Positions 5,960 through 12,344 of a DNA stretch of 64,000 nucleotides are shown here, piece after piece. Position 1 is the stretch's first letter, and every line of letters starts with the position of its first letter. Below the pieces are notes generated by a model. It was not told the origin of the DNA. It saw only the letters and a program-made list of their open reading frames with translations, and did not search any database. The stretch is from IMG/VR virus record IMGVR_UViG_3300030385_002649, positions 248,001 to 312,000 of that record. One strand, written 5' to 3'. The position numbers and the translations under genes were made by a program.

Positions 5960-6197
5960 ACACCTACTTTCCACTTTAAAGAAAGACTTCCCAGATGGCG
6001 AAGGCGGAGTGGACGTTCGGGTGGCCGCCAAAACAATTTTCGGGATTGTGGACGATTCTCGAATTAGATCTATGCAGTCGGTAGTAGATTTCCCGACGTG
6101 CAATATACACTCTTATTTGGTGTGGGATTATGTTGGTCTCCGACTCACGTCGGTATTTGAGAAAAATGGCCGAATCAATTGTCGAAGTAGCAGTTAA
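5928..6197 (+). CDS. hypothetical protein
   Basis: ORF within the operon. Confidence 0.5.
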   Translation: MTYLKPKLAAEHLLSTLKKDFPDGEGGVDVRVAAKTIFGIVDDSRIRSMQSVVDFPTCNIHSYLVWDYVGLRLTSVFEKNGRINCRSSS

Positions 6198-7695
6198 CCT
6201 TACTCAAGCCGAGCGAAAAGCCGCCGACGTTTCCTATCCAGGACCACAGGAGTTTGTGCACTTGCACAATCATACCCTGTTTAGTACACTAGACGGAATC
6301 GCAACGCCAGACGAATACTTCGGAGCGTGCGCCGAATTAGGTCACCCCGCTTTTTCTATTACCGACCACGGTAGCATGGCTGCGATTCCAGACGCCTATT
6401 GGGCCGCCAAAAAGCATAAGACCAAGTTCATTGCCGGGTGTGAGATCTACTTCAACGATTTTCACCAAGAACTTGAAGAGAAGCAAGCGAACCCAGACTG
6501 GAAGTTAGGAGCACTCAAAGCCCCTAAAGCTGCCACCTCTGTCGATTATGACATGATGGTAGGAAACGAAGAATGGGGCAAGTATAGGCGCAATCGACAT
6601 CTTACGGTTATGGCTATGAATATGGGAGGATATAGAAATCTCATCCACATGACTAGTGAAGCCTGGGAAATTGGTTTTTATTACAAACCAAGAGTCTGGT
6701 TCGACCAAATCAAGAAATATAACAAGGGCCTCATCATCTTGTCCGGATGCTTGAATGGTCCTGTTTGTCACGCTCTACGAGAAGCCGCAAAATGGGCTAA
6801 GATCTCTCGTGGCAAGCTTAAAGCTGATAAATTCGGAAGGCCAATCCACATCAACTCATACGACGCTAAAAAACGACAGCAGCATTATATGGACGAAGCT
6901 CACATGTGGGTCAAGAAATTTAGGGATCTCTTAGGAGACCGCTTCTATCTAGAATTGCAAATGCCGGGTAAGGAAATCCCGTTTGGCAAAGAAGCCTTCG
7001 CTCTGATCTGTCAAATGGCAAAGAAATATGACATCGATGCGGTCGTTGCTAACGATTGTCACTTCACTCACCGTGCTGATTTTAAAGTGCAAAAATGCAT
7101 GATGGCGGTGGGCCAGGGCGTCCAAATCGACGATCCGAACCTGTTCCACGTAGACTCCGACGAGCAATTTTTTAAGAGTAGAGCACAGTTGAGAAAAACA
7201 TTTTTCGAAGGAGGATATGACAAGTATATCACGCCCGAAGAGTTCGAACAATGCCTTCAAAACACAGTCGAGCTATCAAAGCGGTGTGAAACATTCGACC
7301 CCGACTTGAACCCGAAGCTCCCATCCATCCCAGATGCTGAACCTAAATTGAAGAAGCTAGTCATCGAGGCGTTAAAGAGCACTGGTTTGATGCATTCTGA
7401 TAAGAGATATATGGTCGATGGTAAAATGGTGACCCACAAAGAACAAGCCGCTATCGAATTGAAGCGTTATTGTGAAAAGGGCTTCGCTTCATACTTCTTG
7501 ATCATCAAGGATTTGATCGACTACTCTAAAACCAACCAATGGGACGTCGGACCTGGCCGTGGTAGCGCTGGAGGATCCTTAGTTTGTTATCTTCTTGGTA
7601 TTCATTCACTCGATCCTTTAAAGTGGGGTCTTAGTTCAGTTCGCTTTATGGGCGACAGCCGTGGTGGAGATATGCTCCGCGTATCTATGGATTAG
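6166..7695 (+). CDS. dnaE: DNA polymerase III alpha, N-terminal part (PHP domain plus start of palm)
   Basis: FVHLHNHT.FS.LDG, ITDHG, GCEIY, FYYKPR, LSGCLNG, NDCH, GPGRGSAGGSLVCYLLGI..DP; ends before PDIDIDF. ORF track start is 6130. Confidence 0.93.
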   Translation: MAESIVEVAVNLTQAERKAADVSYPGPQEFVHLHNHTLFSTLDGIATPDEYFGACAELGHPAFSITDHGSMAAIPDAYWAAKKHKTKFIAGCEIYFNDFHQELEEKQANPDWKLGALKAPKAATSVDYDMMVGNEEWGKYRRNRHLTVMAMNMGGYRNLIHMTSEAWEIGFYYKPRVWFDQIKKYNKGLIILSGCLNGPVCHALREAAKWAKISRGKLKADKFGRPIHINSYDAKKRQQHYMDEAHMWVKKFRDLLGDRFYLELQMPGKEIPFGKEAFALICQMAKKYDIDAVVANDCHFTHRADFKVQKCMMAVGQGVQIDDPNLFHVDSDEQFFKSRAQLRKTFFEGGYDKYITPEEFEQCLQNTVELSKRCETFDPDLNPKLPSIPDAEPKLKKLVIEALKSTGLMHSDKRYMVDGKMVTHKEQAAIELKRYCEKGFASYFLIIKDLIDYSKTNQWDVGPGRGSAGGSLVCYLLGIHSLDPLKWGLSSVRFMGDSRGGDMLRVSMD

Positions 7696-8154
7696 ATGAG
7701 CTATTCACGATTGTTGATAAAATTCCAAGAGGCTTTAGATTCTTACGCCTTATTGTCCCAATTTTCCGATCAGGATATGGAGAACCTTGGGTTTTCTGAT
7801 CAGATTAAGCTGGTCCTCTATAAATGGCCTGATATCGCTTCTTCTGCCCTCAACCTTATAATGCGCATGGAAGGGGAAGCGCATGAAGACGTTGTTTCCA
7901 ACGCTTGGCTTAGGTTGGAAAGGGATTTAGACGATACTATAGTACAGCCGGTCGCGGCGTTCTATGAGGGTTTAGCGGAAAAAACAAAACAAAGCATGGG
8001 AGGAGTTCCCATCAATGCAGTGATAAAACCGGAGGTTATACTTTCTTTAGATGCTATTAGCGCTAAGAAAGTTTATGTTGAATGTATTAACCATTTATTT
8101 GATGTTTTAGAAGCGGTAACTAAAACCAAATACCCAAGGATACAAACATCATGA
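7696..8154 (+). CDS. hypothetical protein
   Basis: ORF abutting the dnaE-N stop codon. Confidence 0.6.
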   Translation: MSYSRLLIKFQEALDSYALLSQFSDQDMENLGFSDQIKLVLYKWPDIASSALNLIMRMEGEAHEDVVSNAWLRLERDLDDTIVQPVAAFYEGLAEKTKQSMGGVPINAVIKPEVILSLDAISAKKVYVECINHLFDVLEAVTKTKYPRIQTS

Positions 8155-8546
8155 TCGAAATCGTTATAAATGGATACGGTAAAGTTTCCAAAAAAGCCAA
8201 TTTTGGTGTTTTGTTGAAGGATGATAGGGGCCAAACCCACCAAAGGATCGTCCCTTTGGAAGTGAAATCATCCTATGCGGCTGAGCTTCTAGGTATTAAG
8301 TATGGCTTGTTGACACTTCATGGCCGTGACTATGATATTCTTGTTAAGACCTCTTCCCCACACGTTTCTAAGTCGTTGACTAAGAAGGATGGGGAGTGGC
8401 CTAAGAGCAGGTCTAAGAGCATGGAGTTGTTGGACGAGATTAGAACTCTCGCTGAAGAGTTTGGAACTTTTGAGTGCGTTTTTGATAAGAGTAGTCCAGA
8501 GATGGATTACGTTAAAGAACTCGCTAGGAAACCAATTCGTTCTTAG
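8151..8546 (+). CDS. RNase HI-fold protein, probably inactive
   Basis: IVING..FGV..SSYAAELLG..ILVKTSS..W pattern follows RNase HI, but two catalytic Asp positions are N and S. Confidence 0.55.
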   Translation: MIEIVINGYGKVSKKANFGVLLKDDRGQTHQRIVPLEVKSSYAAELLGIKYGLLTLHGRDYDILVKTSSPHVSKSLTKKDGEWPKSRSKSMELLDEIRTLAEEFGTFECVFDKSSPEMDYVKELARKPIRS

Positions 8547-8558
8547 TATCTGAACCGT

Positions 8559-11500
8559 ATGGTTCATGTTAAAGATTGGGGCACGCTTAAGAAGCTGACC
8601 GCTAAATTGCTAGCGGTCAAGAAGCTGCGCGAGCCCTATATAAGCAAATTGAAGTTCGAGCTTAAAGAGATCGACAAGCAGGGCGCGAACCGCTACTGGC
8701 TAGATCTATTTAATAGCCGAGAAAAATTCAATCACAACAAAAACGGTCTAGTCTTGCCGTACATCTTGGGCTTAACGAAGATTGATCCAATCGACAGGGG
8801 TATTCCACACAAGGTCGAATACCATCCTGACTTCCCTGATATTGATATCGACTTCTTACCAGAAGCTAGAGAGCACGTCAAGAAGTATGCTAAAAAACAA
8901 TATGGCGACGATTTCGTTTGTACTGTTGGCATGTGGATTAGGTATAAGACCAAGTTGGCGCTCCAAGACGCCGCTACCGCGCTTGGCGTCAACCGTGGAG
9001 AAGTCATTGCGGTTTGTAAGCACCTTCCTGAAGAATTTGACACAATGCCTTTCGATCAAGCTTATGAAGAATTCGAGAATTTCAAGATCTTCGCTGATGA
9101 AAACCCAGAGCTTGTAAGACTAGCTTATGGCATGACTGGAAAGATTAAAGCTCAGAGTAAGCACGCTGGCGGATTGATCATTTCTAGCGTCCCGATTAGA
9201 GATCACGTCCCTCTGACTTATTCTGGCAAGAAAGGTGATAAACAGTGGACCTCCGAGTGGACTGAAGGCATGGCCGACTCTCAGTTGTCGAAGTTCGGTC
9301 TTGTAAAGTTCGACATTCTCGGGCTCATTAATATCGCTTATATTTGGAACTGCAAGAAGTTGGTCGCTAAAAACCACGGAGTGAAAATCGACTTCGAGGA
9401 TATCGATCCCGAAGATGACAGGGCGGGCTGGGCAGAATACGCTGATGGCCGAGTAGAAAAAATCCTGCTCAACGATCCTGATACGCTAGAGGCCGCTGAC
9501 AACCTAAAATTAGCTTCTATCTTCCAGTTCGACACTGATTTCCAACAGAGTGTTGTAGAAAAAGGTGGCGTCAGATCTTTCATGGACTTGGTAATCTATA
9601 CTAGTCTTGGTAGACCTGGTCCGCTTCCTATGATTGATGTCTATATTGGAAACCGAGACGACCAATTAGAAGGGTGGAACGACGTTTTACATCCTATCAT
9701 GAAGGATATCCTAAAAGAAACTAAGGGCGTACTAACATTCCAAGAACAGCTTCTTAGAACGTGGACCGAACTCTGTGGCTTCACAATGCCTGAAGCTGAG
9801 TCTGCGCAGAAGGCAGTTAAAAAGAAGAGGATCGAAATCCTGGATAAGATTGGTCCTAAGGTTATCGAGGGTGCAGCTGGGCTGATCGGCCAGGATGAGG
9901 CTGAAGCTCTCTGGGATAAGATGGTCAGCTTTGGTCGTTACTGCTTCAACAAATGTCTTGCTTCTGACACCATAATTATAGACCCGCTTACCAATGAGTC
10001 TATGACGATTGAAGAATTATATCAATCTAAAAAATCGTTTAATTTGTTATCGTATGATGGTAATAAACCTTTCATAGATGAAGTGGTTGATGTTTATTAT
10101 AATGGAAAACAAGAAGTTTTCGAAATAGAATTTAGCCATGGCATTAAACAAACGGTGACCATTGGTCATAAATTTATGAATGAATTTGGAGAGATGGAAG
10201 AAGTTTCTTCATTATTAGAGTCTGGTCATGCTATCAAATATATAAGAGATGGAGTGATTAATGTACAAGAAAGTAAACGATCAAATAGAACTGAAAATTG
10301 TCGAGCTTTATCAAAACAGGTTGACTTACAATCAAATTTTGAAAGAGATAGAAATAAAATTGAGCCATGGGACGATAACTCGAGTGATAAAAAAACACGG
10401 CGTGAAGAGGAAATTCTTAACCAAAGCATGCAACACAGTGGATCACCATTATTTCGAGAATATAAATTCTTCGGAGAAAGCCTATTGGTTGGGCATGTTG
10501 ATAGCAGATGGTTATATTCACGAGGCAAGAGGATATGTGAGCTTGCAACTTCATCACAAAGACCAAAGCTTAGTAAAGAAATTTGGAGAAGATTTGAAGT
10601 CGCCAAGAAAAATATTGACTTGTCGAAAAGGAGATTTTACACAAATGCGGAGTACGGTAAGCAGCAAGAAGATGATTGCGGATTTGAAACGTCTTGGTGT
10701 CATACAAGGGAAGTCTACCAAGGAAACTATTCCGGACGTTCCATTCATGTCACACCTATTAAGGGGGTTGATGGATGGGGACGGATGTATTGTGGTCAAT
10801 TCGAAAGGGTACCCAATGATAAGACTTGGGTCGAGTTTTGCTTGTTTAGAGAAAGTGAGAACCATTTTAGTTTCCGAATGTGGGGTGAGGGCTTCAAAGA
10901 TTACGGAATATCAAAACAATTTTTGTGCTATTTGCTGGACTGGTTTGTCTCAGACCCAGGCGATACTGAAGTTTTTGTATCAAGATGCCACAAGATTTCT
11001 GCTAAGGAAAAAGCAAATGGCCGATGCAATATTGTCAGCATTAGAAATCTCGGAGTTAAAAAGACTTATTCCCCAGAGATGACGTCCGATCATCATAATT
11101 ATCTTACAAAACCGCAGAATGGAGAAGTGGTTCATGCTAATAGCCACGCAGTCGCGTATATCATGGTCGCTTATAGGTGTTTGTGGTTGAAGACTTATTA
11201 TCCTGCTGAATGGTGGGCTTCAGTCTTGAGCCATTGCCCTGCCCACAAGTTCGTACGTTATATGGGCGCTGCAAGAACTGACAAAATCGCCTTTGGCACG
11301 CTAGACGTGGACAACCTGACCAAAGACTTCACAGTCCAAAAAGGGAGCATTATTCCTGGTCTATCGTCTATCAAAGGAATCGGAGACGAAACCGCCCAAA
11401 ACTTGGAGGACGAAAGTGCTAAAGGTACGTTCGAGGGGATTGAAGAGTTCATCGAACGGTGTGGCAAGAGTAAGGCTAACCTAGAGAGGCTGGTCAAGCT

Positions 11501-12344
11501 AGGCGCTTTCGACAACATCAACCCTAATAGGAAAGCTCTCTGGATGTGGTACCTATACAAATACGCCACTGGGAAAGAAATCACCGAGCTTAGAAGACAG
11601 ATTGATTATTGCTATACTTGGTCGCCCCTCGCCGTTCAAGAAGAACGGGATAGACAGAAGATTGAGTATAAGAGACAATATCAAAACAGAAAAATTCCTA
11701 AGCGAATCACAACTTGGATTCCGGCTGCCCCTTCTGTTACGCCGCGCGTGTTCAATCCTGATGTGGAGCTTACGAAAGAAGATATTCGGCTTGGCAAAAA
11801 GTTTAAGCTTGATTATGAACAAGTTGTCGCGTTGTTCCCAACGGATTTTAAGTTGGCAGAGCGGCTGGAAGCCGAGCACGATTACTTGGGCTTTTATTGG
11901 AGTTCTCCACTCGACATGTTTCAACACTCTGACAACACTACTATTGAATTCGCAAAGACTTGCGGACTTATTGAATGTGTTATCGAGGAGAAATTTGTTA
12001 GGCAGGGAACAAACGGAGAATATTGCATTCTAAACGTGAACGATGGTCAAGCGACTGCTCGTGTTAACGTTTGGGGCAATGAGGTGCACCTTAACGATCC
12101 TGAAGTTCTTCAGCCTGGAACAGGTGTCCAAATGGAGGTCATTTGGAAGGATCAATATAGGAGCTTTAGTTTGAAGGCACGGTCGATCATTATACCGTTG
12201 CCCTTCAAAGAAGAGGACGAAGACGACACATACTTTAAAGAGTTGTCTAAGGCCACCACTTCAGGTTCTGATGAACTTGACGAATTAAAAGAAATGTTGG
12301 AGAATATCGATGATCTTGAAAGAGATTTCAATGAAGCAGAGTGA
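8559..12344 (+). CDS. dnaE: DNA polymerase III alpha, C-terminal part (palm/fingers/HhH/OB) containing an intein
   Basis: PDIDIDF, KHAGG, LVKFDILGL, IFQF, RPGP, FQEQ, YCFNK|SHAVAY, GLSSIKGIG, E..YLGFY.S. Confidence 0.95.
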   Translation: MVHVKDWGTLKKLTAKLLAVKKLREPYISKLKFELKEIDKQGANRYWLDLFNSREKFNHNKNGLVLPYILGLTKIDPIDRGIPHKVEYHPDFPDIDIDFLPEAREHVKKYAKKQYGDDFVCTVGMWIRYKTKLALQDAATALGVNRGEVIAVCKHLPEEFDTMPFDQAYEEFENFKIFADENPELVRLAYGMTGKIKAQSKHAGGLIISSVPIRDHVPLTYSGKKGDKQWTSEWTEGMADSQLSKFGLVKFDILGLINIAYIWNCKKLVAKNHGVKIDFEDIDPEDDRAGWAEYADGRVEKILLNDPDTLEAADNLKLASIFQFDTDFQQSVVEKGGVRSFMDLVIYTSLGRPGPLPMIDVYIGNRDDQLEGWNDVLHPIMKDILKETKGVLTFQEQLLRTWTELCGFTMPEAESAQKAVKKKRIEILDKIGPKVIEGAAGLIGQDEAEALWDKMVSFGRYCFNKCLASDTIIIDPLTNESMTIEELYQSKKSFNLLSYDGNKPFIDEVVDVYYNGKQEVFEIEFSHGIKQTVTIGHKFMNEFGEMEEVSSLLESGHAIKYIRDGVINVQESKRSNRTENCRALSKQVDLQSNFERDRNKIEPWDDNSSDKKTRREEEILNQSMQHSGSPLFREYKFFGESLLVGHVDSRWLYSRGKRICELATSSQRPKLSKEIWRRFEVAKKNIDLSKRRFYTNAEYGKQQEDDCGFETSWCHTREVYQGNYSGRSIHVTPIKGVDGWGRMYCGQFERVPNDKTWVEFCLFRESENHFSFRMWGEGFKDYGISKQFLCYLLDWFVSDPGDTEVFVSRCHKISAKEKANGRCNIVSIRNLGVKKTYSPEMTSDHHNYLTKPQNGEVVHANSHAVAYIMVAYRCLWLKTYYPAEWWASVLSHCPAHKFVRYMGAARTDKIAFGTLDVDNLTKDFTVQKGSIIPGLSSIKGIGDETAQNLEDESAKGTFEGIEEFIERCGKSKANLERLVKLGAFDNINPNRKALWMWYLYKYATGKEITELRRQIDYCYTWSPLAVQEERDRQKIEYKRQYQNRKIPKRITTWIPAAPSVTPRVFNPDVELTKEDIRLGKKFKLDYEQVVALFPTDFKLAERLEAEHDYLGFYWSSPLDMFQHSDNTTIEFAKTCGLIECVIEEKFVRQGTNGEYCILNVNDGQATARVNVWGNEVHLNDPEVLQPGTGVQMEVIWKDQYRSFSLKARSIIIPLPFKEEDEDDTYFKELSKATTSGSDELDELKEMLENIDDLERDFNEAE
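9954..11141 (+). mobile_element. intein (396 aa) in DnaE at FNK|SHA
   Basis: Starts CLASDT (Cys1), block B T..H (VTIGHKF), block F IVSIRNLGVKKTY, ends VHAN before Ser+1. Removing it restores FNKSHAVAY. AT-richer than the exteins. Confidence 0.93.
10261..11082 (+). CDS. LAGLIDADG homing endonuclease with N-terminal HTH, in the +1 frame inside the intein
   Basis: AYWLGMLIADG and LLRGLMDGDG motifs; GGAG at 10251-54, 6 nt before the ATG; in-frame TGA at 10255-57. Confidence 0.9.
   Translation: MYKKVNDQIELKIVELYQNRLTYNQILKEIEIKLSHGTITRVIKKHGVKRKFLTKACNTVDHHYFENINSSEKAYWLGMLIADGYIHEARGYVSLQLHHKDQSLVKKFGEDLKSPRKILTCRKGDFTQMRSTVSSKKMIADLKRLGVIQGKSTKETIPDVPFMSHLLRGLMDGDGCIVVNSKGYPMIRLGSSFACLEKVRTILVSECGVRASKITEYQNNFCAICWTGLSQTQAILKFLYQDATRFLLRKKQMADAILSALEISELKRLIPQR

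What the first reader, a model, noticed from the sequence alone, without database searches (positions are those of the whole stretch)
9954..11141. Intein whose homing endonuclease is hidden in the +1 frame (about 820 nt of dual coding)
Seen: the DnaE frame is open through a 396-aa intein with intact splicing blocks, but its central ~260 aa are motif-less and rich in R/S/W/C. The same DNA in the +1 frame (10261..11082) encodes a complete HTH plus two-motif LAGLIDADG nuclease with its own GGAG RBS and ATG, and an in-frame TGA two codons upstream. Known: canonical inteins carry the nuclease in frame as part of the spliced protein. A rough estimate is that an AT-rich 273-codon gene would put some 15-25 stops in its alternate frame; none occur, which implies selection on both frames. 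Inference: a free-standing endonuclease gene invaded a mini-intein out of frame. The intein removes the junk translation by protein splicing, while the nuclease is translated independently and can mobilise the composite element. In-frame annotation would miss this architecture.
Basis: partly seen in the sequence, partly recalled or inferred. Interest (0 to 1): 0.92.

Follow-up and report, generated by a model that had tools for sequence, protein, structure and literature searches.

The report
Phage DnaE intein with out-of-frame nuclease
A giant-phage DNA polymerase gene carries a self-splicing protein insert (intein) whose homing nuclease gene is read in a shifted frame of the same DNA; the pattern is real and conserved, but it is a further example of a rare layout already described elsewhere.

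Summary
ORF 8559-12344 (DnaE-like Pol III alpha) stays open through a 396-aa intein (9954-11141). The +1 frame (10261-11082) encodes a 273-aa HTH plus double-motif LAGLIDADG nuclease with GGAG and ATG.

Synonymous shuffling predicts 17 +/- 2.8 host-frame stops; none occur (P about 5e-17).

The layout is not an assembly artefact. A TARA scaffold is identical, and seven further distinct relatives from other samples share it.

In those relatives the nuclease frame is under purifying selection (dN/dS 0.07-0.12, model pLDDT 94, fold of I-AniI/I-OnuI). The host frame over the same DNA is kept open but not conserved (dN/dS above 1, pLDDT 23-48).

The same DnaE site also occurs in other states:
- empty;
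- with 142-156-aa mini-inteins that keep the nuclease's 3' tail;
- as split inteins with a separate, homologous nuclease gene.

The overprinted nucleases form one clade, sister to a split-intein nuclease.

The architecture is not new. Gorbalenya (1998) and two Gogarten-lab preprints (2025, 2026) describe inteins with out-of-frame nucleases, including a LAGLIDADG in cyanobacterial dnaX.

Verdict: a real, well-supported new member of a known rare kind. Splicing, separate translation and homing are inferred, not shown.

The parts
8559..12344 (+). Host gene: C-terminal part of a DnaE-type DNA polymerase III alpha (1261-aa precursor; about 865 aa after splicing)
   Evidence: Pfam DNA_pol3_alpha, DNA_pol3_finger and HHH_6; NCBIfam Pol III alpha models.
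9954..11141 (+). Intein, 396 aa, Cys1 ... His-Ala-Asn, followed by Ser+1
   Evidence: Residues invariant across 8 relatives: C1, T69, H72 (block B TxxH), H381-N382-Y383 (block F), N396. Relatives with an empty site join the two flanks directly, FNK|SHA.
9954..10257 (+). N-terminal splicing domain (blocks A and B), host frame only
   Evidence: TIGR01445 hit on aa 1-75; model pLDDT 56-87 for aa 1-88; aligns with the mini-inteins and with the N-halves of the split inteins.
10234..10246 (+). Invariant 13-nt block TCAAATATATAAG, 15-27 nt upstream of the nuclease ATG; candidate cis-element for nuclease expression (inference)
   Evidence: It is the only invariant run of 8 nt or more in the six-sequence, roughly 1800-nt codon alignment, where 29% of columns are invariant. 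It has diverged in the nuclease-less mini-inteins.
10251..10254 (+). Shine-Dalgarno-like GGAG, 6 nt before the nuclease ATG, embedded in host codons Asp-Gly-Val
   Evidence: A purine-rich GGAG/GGAGG/GAGAG/GAGG motif precedes the ATG in the six close members, and GGGG precedes it in L060.
10261..11082 (+). Homing endonuclease gene in the +1 frame: 273 aa, N-terminal three-helix HTH-like domain plus a monomeric double-motif LAGLIDADG core
   Evidence: PF14528 hit. pLDDT 94.4, pTM 0.81. Foldseek best matches I-AniI, E-DreI, I-Tsp061I and I-OnuI at E about 1e-8. Both motif Asp-Gly pairs (D83-G84, D174-G175) are invariant in 40 homologs. dN/dS 0.07-0.12.
10260..11021 (+). Host-frame read-through of the nuclease gene: stop-free but unconserved linker of about 254 aa between the two splicing halves
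   Evidence: 0 stops against 17 expected. Host-frame identity 25-55% against 51-80% for the nuclease frame on the same DNA. dN/dS 1.1-1.9. pLDDT 23-48. No Pfam domain.
11022..11141 (+). C-terminal splicing domain (blocks F and G); its first ~60 nt are also read in +1 as the last 20 codons and stop of the nuclease
   Evidence: Aligns with the mini-inteins and with the C-halves of the split inteins. pLDDT 54-74. The nuclease stop TGA lies inside the conserved Ser-Pro-Glu-Met codons in all six close members. The start coordinate is approximate.
9933..9953 (+). Upstream extein flank (GRYCFNK): left half of the presumed homing site
   Evidence: Empty-site alleles L064, L065 and L069 have nearly the same DNA joined directly to the downstream flank.
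11142..11162 (+). Downstream extein flank (SHAVAYI): right half of the presumed homing site

Best explanation
This is a non-canonical, overprinted intein in the DnaE-type polymerase gene of an uncultured marine giant phage (370-kb contig).

How it most likely works:
1. The polymerase is translated as a 1261-aa precursor.
2. The two halves of a class-1-type Hint domain (about 100 aa N-terminal, about 40 aa C-terminal) are joined by a linker of about 254 aa. That linker is the -1 reading of a nuclease gene. It has no structure or conserved sequence of its own and is only kept free of stop codons.
3. Protein splicing removes the whole 396-aa segment and joins ...CFNK to SHAV....
4. The nuclease, an HTH plus double-LAGLIDADG enzyme of a large family of free-standing phage homing endonucleases, is made separately. 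Translation starts internally at its own SD and ATG in the +1 frame and ends at a TGA inside the C-terminal splicing domain.
5. It presumably cuts intein-less DnaE alleles of co-infecting relatives at the FNK|SHA junction, so that repair copies in the intein and nuclease together.

Shown computationally: the anatomy, selection on both frames, the fold of the nuclease, and the existence of empty, mini and split alleles at the same site.

Inferred: splicing, separate translation, cleavage specificity and homing.
For: - Anatomy and domain hits.
- Stop avoidance in the window: 0 against 17 +/- 2.8 expected, P about 5e-17. It recurs in all seven other distinct members, with 9.3-17 stops expected and 0 observed.
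- Independent records: a TARA scaffold is identical over 8819 nt; the member P0007 is seen on 20 contigs from several sources.
- All eight members keep an intact 261-282-aa ORF in the +1 frame with an ATG and a stop inside the Int-C coding region. An SD-like motif precedes the ATG in the seven whose upstream DNA is held. All indels are multiples of three.
- Substitutions follow the nuclease frame (position 3 > 1 > 2). Nuclease identity is 51-80% against 25-55% for the host frame. NG86 dN/dS is 0.07-0.12 for the nuclease frame and 1.1-1.9 for the host frame.
- Nuclease model pLDDT 94.4, with LAGLIDADG meganuclease fold matches. The host-frame insert has pLDDT 23-48 between modelled splicing halves.
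- Catalytic Asp-Gly pairs and the splicing residues are invariant.
- Close DnaE relatives with an empty site (63-65% identical) have near-identical flanking DNA.
- Split inteins at the same site in relatives show that the two halves can work without a structured connection.
- No RNA family or group I intron was detected.
- The same class of architecture is published.
Against: - There is no expression, proteomic or biochemical evidence for either product.
- Read-level support was not available; only agreement of assemblies.
- The penultimate intein residue is Ala, not His. This is common in DnaE-type inteins from my own knowledge, but was not tested here.
- The SD-like motif is weak in L003, and the upstream DNA of L059 is not held because the contig starts in adapter sequence.
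- No convincing promoter or conserved RNA structure for nuclease expression was found.
- The structure comparison is uneven: 40 sequences in the nuclease alignment against 8 for the intein.
Confidence: 0.85

Rival explanations
1. Assembly or sequencing artefact: a canonical in-frame intein-nuclease made to look out of frame by two compensating indels.
For: The window comes from a metagenome assembly, and no reads could be inspected.
Against: - Eight distinct sequences from different samples, sources and G+C contents (0.34-0.48 in the nuclease ORF) show the same frame relation, the same start position and the same stop position.
- A TARA scaffold is identical over 8819 nt.
- The +1 frame is closed by stops 1-4 codons before the ATG, and again inside the C-terminal splicing domain.
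- An artefact would not remove about 17 expected host-frame stops.
Confidence: 0.01
2. The nuclease is not made separately but is joined to the intein by programmed ribosomal frameshifting. That would give an Int-N-nuclease fusion, or a canonical-like intein after two shifts.
For: The two frames overlap on one mRNA. Internal initiation inside a translated ORF can be inefficient, which is general knowledge and was not tested here.
Against: - The +1 frame opens only 1-4 codons before the ATG, which leaves almost no room for a shift site, and no conserved slippery sequence is visible there.
- Every member keeps an ATG, and all but the truncated L059 show an SD-like motif.
- Homologs in split inteins and elsewhere are free-standing proteins that begin at the equivalent residue.
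- A return shift would be needed exactly at the nuclease stop to restore the C-terminal splicing domain.
Confidence: 0.04
3. The nuclease gene is a decaying relic. Only the host frame matters, and the +1 ORF persists by inertia.
For: Homing endonuclease genes often decay after fixation (homing-cycle model, discussed in the papers). Mini-inteins that have lost the nuclease exist at this site.
Against: - dN/dS is 0.07-0.12 across pairs whose synonymous sites are near or beyond saturation.
- The ORF is intact in 8 of 8 members down to 39% identity.
- Both catalytic Asp-Gly pairs are invariant.
- The model has pLDDT 94.
Confidence: 0.05
4. The host-frame insert is itself a functional domain or regulatory linker, for example one that tunes or conditions splicing, and not just junk that is tolerated.
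For: - It is present in every member.
- Its composition is hydrophilic (Kyte-Doolittle -0.64 to -1.12).
- It has slightly fewer large hydrophobic residues than synonymous shuffles produce: 0.19-0.24 against 0.20-0.25, z -4 to -6.
Against: - The composition effect is about 1-2 percentage points and may be a by-product of stop avoidance.
- Host-frame identity is 25-55%, with dN/dS above 1.
- There is no confident structure and no domain hit.
- Split and mini alleles do without it.
Confidence: 0.05

Closest known systems
Cyanobacterial dnaX intein with an out-of-frame LAGLIDADG endonuclease (Gorbalenya 1998 'Non-canonical inteins', as cited; Phillips, DeSimone and Gogarten, bioRxiv 10.64898/2026.09.14.751524)
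   Same: - A same-strand alternative-frame LAGLIDADG gene lies between the splicing halves of an intein in a replication gene.
- The host frame is open but predicted to be disordered.
- An SD motif precedes the alternative ORF.
- dN/dS is low in the nuclease frame and above 1 in the host frame.
- Mini-intein and empty alleles coexist.
   Different: - The host is a giant-phage DnaE, not bacterial dnaX.
- The frame is +1 rather than +2.
- Here the nuclease's nearest relatives and their contexts could be identified: free-standing genes inside split DnaE inteins at the same site.
- Homology between the two nucleases could not be tested with the tools.
Non-canonical actinobacteriophage inteins (bioRxiv 10.1101/2025.01.02.630785)
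   Same: - Phage inteins whose nuclease is encoded outside the intein frame.
- The in-frame segment is structureless.
- The authors propose an origin by invasion of a free-standing nuclease gene, and note that annotation pipelines miss such cases.
   Different: Their cases are antisense LAGLIDADG, antisense VSR-like and frame-3 endonuclease VII-like. No same-strand out-of-frame LAGLIDADG is reported there. A DNA polymerase is among their four host types, but its family was not checked.
Fractured genes: split inteins with a free-standing endonuclease gene between the halves (Dassa et al. 2009, PMC2677866)
   Same: - Marine or phage replication genes, including DnaE.
- The nuclease gene sits exactly between Int-N and Int-C.
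- The nuclease's 3' end overlaps the Int-C coding region (6-69 bp in that paper).
- Relatives of the window at the same site have this arrangement, with homologous nucleases.
   Different: In the window the host frame is continuous, so the intein is contiguous and cis-splicing. Dassa's nucleases were GIY-YIG or Vsr-like, not LAGLIDADG.
ShiLan-type out-of-frame HNH insertions in phage methylase genes (PMC11855218)
   Same: A hidden out-of-frame homing nuclease lies inside an insertion that stays open in the host frame.
   Different: There is no splicing domain there, so the insert stays in the protein. Here an intact Hint domain should remove it.
Canonical LAGLIDADG inteins (for example PI-SceI type; from general knowledge)
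   Same: The nuclease class is the same, and so is the insertion point of the nuclease module between blocks B and F.
   Different: In canonical inteins the nuclease is an in-frame domain of the spliced-out protein. Here it is a separate polypeptide from a different frame.

Membership tests
Intein (Hint-domain protein-splicing element) | Nucleophile (Cys/Ser) at position 1 and Ser/Thr/Cys at +1 | tested here: met
   Cys1 (TGT 9954-9956) and Ser+1 (AGC 11142-11144). Cys1 is invariant in the 8 aligned relatives, and Ser+1 is present in all 8 occupied alleles.
Intein (Hint-domain protein-splicing element) | Block B TxxH, block F and terminal Asn (block G) | tested here: met
   T69, H72, H381-N382-Y383 and N396 are invariant. 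TIGR01445 scores above its cut-off. Pfam Intein_splicing scores only below its cut-off. The penultimate residue is Ala rather than His.
Intein (Hint-domain protein-splicing element) | Removing it restores a continuous, conserved host protein; intein-less alleles exist | tested here: met
   L064, L065, L069 and many others read FNK directly followed by S/A-H-A.
Intein (Hint-domain protein-splicing element) | Protein-splicing activity | not testable with these tools
   Needs an expression and splicing assay.
LAGLIDADG homing endonuclease (monomeric, two motifs) | Two LAGLIDADG helices, each ending in a conserved acidic residue | tested here: met
   Motif 1 ends at D83-G84 and motif 2 at D174-G175. 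Both pairs are invariant in 40 homologs. PF14528 scores above its cut-off.
LAGLIDADG homing endonuclease (monomeric, two motifs) | Pseudo-symmetric alpha-beta-beta-alpha-beta-beta-alpha fold | tested here: met
   Model pLDDT 94.4. Foldseek matches to I-AniI, E-DreI, I-Tsp061I and I-OnuI at probability 1.0 and E about 1e-8.
LAGLIDADG homing endonuclease (monomeric, two motifs) | Site-specific cleavage of the insert-less allele, and homing | not testable with these tools
   Empty alleles exist. Cleavage was not assayed.
Non-canonical intein with out-of-frame endonuclease (Gorbalenya 1998; Gogarten-lab preprints 2025, 2026) | Host frame open across the nuclease region but without a recognisable in-frame domain | tested here: met
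Non-canonical intein with out-of-frame endonuclease (Gorbalenya 1998; Gogarten-lab preprints 2025, 2026) | Complete nuclease ORF in another frame, with its own start signals and under purifying selection | tested here: met
Non-canonical intein with out-of-frame endonuclease (Gorbalenya 1998; Gogarten-lab preprints 2025, 2026) | Both products actually made | not testable with these tools
   No expression data were available.
Fractured gene / natural split intein with a free-standing nuclease gene (Dassa 2009) | Host gene broken into two ORFs at the intein, each carrying one intein half | tested here: not met
   The window ORF is continuous from 8559 to 12344. The feature is met in relatives L070, L080, L083, L088, L146 and L147. 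In L113 only the truncated N-part was seen.
Group I intron-encoded LAGLIDADG gene | Catalytic intron RNA around the nuclease ORF | tested here: not met
   No Rfam match at E up to 1 in 9700-11400. The selected open host frame argues against RNA splicing.

The most novel reading that the evidence does not exclude
The overprinted contiguous intein and the natural split inteins at this DnaE site may be two states of one intein-plus-nuclease lineage. The eight overprinted nucleases form one clade, whose sister sits in a split intein with a closely similar C-half.

If so, the overprinted form would be the viable intermediate that Dassa's model lacks. A nuclease gene enters an intein without killing the host gene, and a single later nonsense or frameshift mutation then turns the contiguous intein into a trans-splicing split intein. 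The opposite direction, a re-fused split intein, would also be possible.

This would make the origin of natural split inteins directly testable on one allelic series: empty, mini, overprinted, split.
Probability: 0.3. Interest if true: 0.7.

Novelty: new member of a known kind. Interest (0 to 1): 0.5.

Why it matters
- It adds an unusually clean case to a class of mobile element that annotation pipelines miss. Here they call only the long polymerase ORF.
- It gives a quantitative signature that could be used to screen for more: zero of about 80 susceptible codon junctions preceded by a T-ending codon, repeated in eight lineages.
- It places empty, mini, overprinted-contiguous and split alleles, with homologous nucleases, at one insertion site. 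That is the material needed to test how free-standing nucleases and inteins combine and how natural split inteins arise.
- In practice, this family offers related contiguous and split DnaE inteins, plus a set of monomeric LAGLIDADG enzymes with a defined presumed target.

Tried and rejected
- A nucleotide search of the intein against the phage collection found nothing. Only protein-level relatives exist there.
- The viral-contig scan with the nuclease returned only the source contig.
- The genome-contig scan was meant to test a link to the cyanobacterial dnaX nuclease. It failed with the broad alignment. With the narrow one it found only five distant free-standing relatives, none overprinted. 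The link stays untested.
- The search for a conserved RNA hairpin around the nuclease start gave a weak structure (-7.3 kcal/mol) with essentially no covariation. It was not pursued.
- The sigma-70 promoter and terminator scan gave nothing interpretable near the nuclease start.
- The test for selection on host-frame peptide composition beyond stop avoidance showed only a 1-2 point deficit of large hydrophobic residues. I judged this inconclusive.
- The lower third-position divergence of the intein compared with the extein for the window-L002 pair (0.36-0.38 against 0.58-0.64) hints at lateral transfer. It is confounded by the dual-frame constraint, so no claim is made.
- Considered and rejected: assembly artefact, group I intron, frameshift fusion and decaying pseudogene (see rivals).
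Full report
**1. What is there**

ORF 8559-12344 (+) encodes a 1261-aa DnaE-type polymerase fragment with the Pfam domains DNA_pol3_alpha, finger and HHH_6. After ...GRYCFNK it is interrupted by a 396-aa segment that starts with Cys (9954) and ends His-Ala-Asn (11141). Ser-His-Ala follows it.

The N-terminal 75 residues of this segment match TIGR01445 (intein N-terminal splicing region) above its cut-off.

In the +1 frame, 10261-11082 encodes 273 aa that match PF14528 (LAGLIDADG_3) above its cut-off. GGAG lies 6 nt before the ATG, and a TGA closes that frame two codons upstream.

**2. Is the open host frame more than chance?**

Yes. A host-frame stop arises whenever a nuclease codon ending in T is followed by one starting AA, AG or GA.

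- There are 83 such susceptible codons, and none follows a T-ending codon. For other codons the figure is 69 of 190.
- 20,000 synonymous shuffles give 17.0 +/- 2.8 stops and never fewer than 7. The analytic probability of zero is about 5e-17.
- The third frame carries 36 stops.

**3. Is it an artefact?**

No.

- The window comes from a 370,804-bp IMG/VR contig, and a 136,833-bp TARA scaffold is identical over 8819 nt.
- A protein search with the intein region found five further DnaE genes whose host frame is open through a large insert at the same site. It also found two with small inteins of 156 and 142 aa.
- A profile search of the nuclease found two more overprinted members, L059 and L060.
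- All eight distinct members have an intact ORF of 261-282 aa in the +1 frame, starting with an ATG just after the conserved ...IKYI... strand (...IAYI... in L060).
  - An SD-like purine run precedes the ATG in the seven whose upstream DNA is held. The L059 contig begins in adapter sequence.
  - The stop lies inside the C-terminal splicing region, within the conserved Ser-Pro-Glu-Met codons in the six close members.
  - None has a host-frame stop, against 9-17 expected.
- All length differences are multiples of three.

**4. Which frame is selected for what?**

| Measure (same DNA) | Nuclease frame (+1) | Host frame |
|---|---|---|
| Pairwise amino-acid identity | 51-80% | 25-55% |
| Nei-Gojobori dN/dS | 0.07-0.12 | 1.1-1.9 |
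| AlphaFold confidence | pLDDT 94.4, pTM 0.81 | pLDDT 23-48 for residues 89-348 |

- Nucleotide differences follow the nuclease codon positions (position 3 > 1 > 2).
- The host-frame dN/dS above 1 is the artefact expected when "synonymous" host sites are constrained nuclease sites.
- The nuclease model matches monomeric LAGLIDADG meganucleases: I-AniI, E-DreI, I-Tsp061I and I-OnuI.
- Both motif Asp-Gly pairs are invariant in 40 homologs.
- In the host-frame model the two splicing halves fold with moderate confidence around the low-confidence middle. The alignment depths differ (40 against 8 sequences).
- The splicing residues are invariant.

The nuclease is therefore conserved as a protein, while the host frame across it is conserved only as an open frame.

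Both frames encode conserved protein only at the edges. At the 5' edge, the RBS and ATG lie inside the last N-domain codons. At the 3' edge, about 60-110 nt encode the nuclease tail in +1 and the first strand of the C-terminal splicing domain in the host frame.

**5. Relatives of the nuclease**

- In the phage collection it matches free-standing or intron-type "DOD/LAGLIDADG" endonucleases at 26-31% identity.
- In the representative library the family is large, with 14,460 hits at E up to 1e-10. Most are 220-430-aa stand-alone proteins that cover the whole profile, including the N-terminal HTH-like domain.
- Metagenome and genome scans gave only stand-alone-sized relatives outside the DnaE clade.

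**6. The allelic series at this DnaE site**

A scan for DnaE relatives showed four states.

1. **Empty sites.** These include close relatives at 63-65% identity whose flanking DNA nearly matches the window's flanks.
2. **Mini-inteins.** Their +1 frame still reads the nuclease's C-terminal tail. In L010 it also reads about ten codons (...TRYL.KK...) that the smaller mini-intein lacks. These codons correspond to a motif that is conserved in free-standing homologs. The mini-inteins therefore look like deletion derivatives that lost the nuclease.
3. **The overprinted contiguous form.**
4. **Split inteins.** Int-N ends in a stop after about 100 aa, a separate nuclease gene follows, and its end overlaps a separate Int-C-plus-C-extein gene.
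   - In L080, L088, L146 and L147 that nuclease is homologous over its full length to the window's. The pairwise comparisons for L088 and L080 gave 26-28% identity, E 3e-29 and 1e-19; in the alignment L146 is 38% and L147 32% identical.
   - In L083 and L070 it is a different nuclease.

In a maximum-likelihood tree the eight overprinted nucleases form one clade (support 100/97). That clade is sister to the split-intein nuclease of L146 (97/96).

The overprinted layout thus arose once and has persisted across phages whose polymerases have diverged to about 40% identity.

The direction of change is unresolved.

- Contiguous to split needs only one disabling mutation plus a start codon for Int-C.
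- Split to contiguous would need all host-frame stops removed at once.
- The split state, however, is the more widely scattered one in the nuclease tree.

**7. Mechanism**

The precursor is translated through the nuclease gene in the host frame. The Hint halves associate, as they must also do in trans in the split relatives, and they excise the whole 396-aa segment.

The nuclease is translated separately from its own SD and ATG. It would cut empty alleles during co-infection, and repair would then copy in the element.

No group I intron or other RNA family is present. A frameshift fusion is unlikely, because the +1 frame opens only 1-4 codons before the ATG.

How the nuclease is expressed is unknown. 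The only invariant nucleotide run of 8 or more in the alignment is a 13-mer (10234-10246), 15-27 nt upstream of the ATG. It has diverged in the nuclease-less mini-inteins. It may be a promoter or another cis-element, but this is an inference.

**8. Comparison with what is known**

The architecture is not new.

- The papers read here credit Gorbalenya (1998) with proposing nucleases in alternative ORFs of inteins.
- The Gogarten laboratory reported actinophage inteins with antisense LAGLIDADG, antisense VSR-like and frame-3 endonuclease VII-like genes (bioRxiv 10.1101/2025.01.02.630785).
- In September 2026 the same laboratory reported a +2-frame LAGLIDADG in the cyanobacterial dnaX intein. Its evidence includes SD motifs, a disordered in-frame segment, per-frame dN/dS, and coexisting empty, mini and full alleles (bioRxiv 10.64898/2026.09.14.751524).
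- Dassa et al. (PMC2677866) described the split-intein version with a free-standing nuclease.
- PMC11855218 describes hidden out-of-frame HNH genes without an intein.
- Literature searches found no description of a phage DnaE intein with an out-of-frame LAGLIDADG.

**9. Verdict**

The central interpretation is supported by comparative evidence, while the origin scenario and the implied novelty are not.

This is a new member of a known, rare kind. What it adds is the complete allelic series at one site and the sister relation between overprinted and split forms.

Noticed in passing
window 6130-7695, 7696-8154, 8151-8546, 8559-12344: The phage DnaE is itself encoded in two genes. The first (521 aa) carries the PHP domain and the start of the Pol III alpha domain; the second (1261 aa) carries the rest. 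Two small ORFs of 152 and 131 aa lie between them; the second has a weak RNase H-like hit. The same layout recurs in the relatives L002, L003, L007 and L010.
   Followed up: partly
L002 1-2158: In the relative L002 the upstream DnaE N-terminal gene (1284 aa) carries precomputed hits for Hint, Intein_splicing and LAGLIDADG_3. This suggests a second, apparently canonical in-frame intein in the same polymerase.
   Followed up: no
window 10234-10246: The 13-nt block TCAAATATATAAG is invariant in six overprinted members, including its synonymous positions. It is the only invariant run of 8 nt or more in the roughly 1800-nt alignment, and it has diverged in the mini-inteins. It may be a promoter or another expression element for the nuclease.
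   Followed up: partly
L065 (empty-site allele), also L073: Some empty alleles have Ala instead of Ser at the +1 position (FNK|AHAV). An intein inserted there could not splice, so such alleles might be immune to productive invasion.
   Followed up: no
L018-L021, L027, L028, L052: Several distant relatives of the nuclease have an antisense frame open across the whole match (270-325 aa). This could be chance, or further antisense-overprinted cases like those in the 2025 preprint.
   Followed up: no
L083 2915-4264; L070 3167-3862: Split DnaE inteins at the same site carry other inserts: a 450-aa protein with REase_MTES_1575 and Mom domains (L083), and a 232-aa protein with no Pfam hit (L070). The site has therefore been used by unrelated nuclease genes.
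   Followed up: partly
L059 1-30: The contig begins with what looks like Nextera adapter sequence, recognised from memory. Its 5' end is therefore an assembly artefact, and the N-terminal part of that intein is missing.
   Followed up: no
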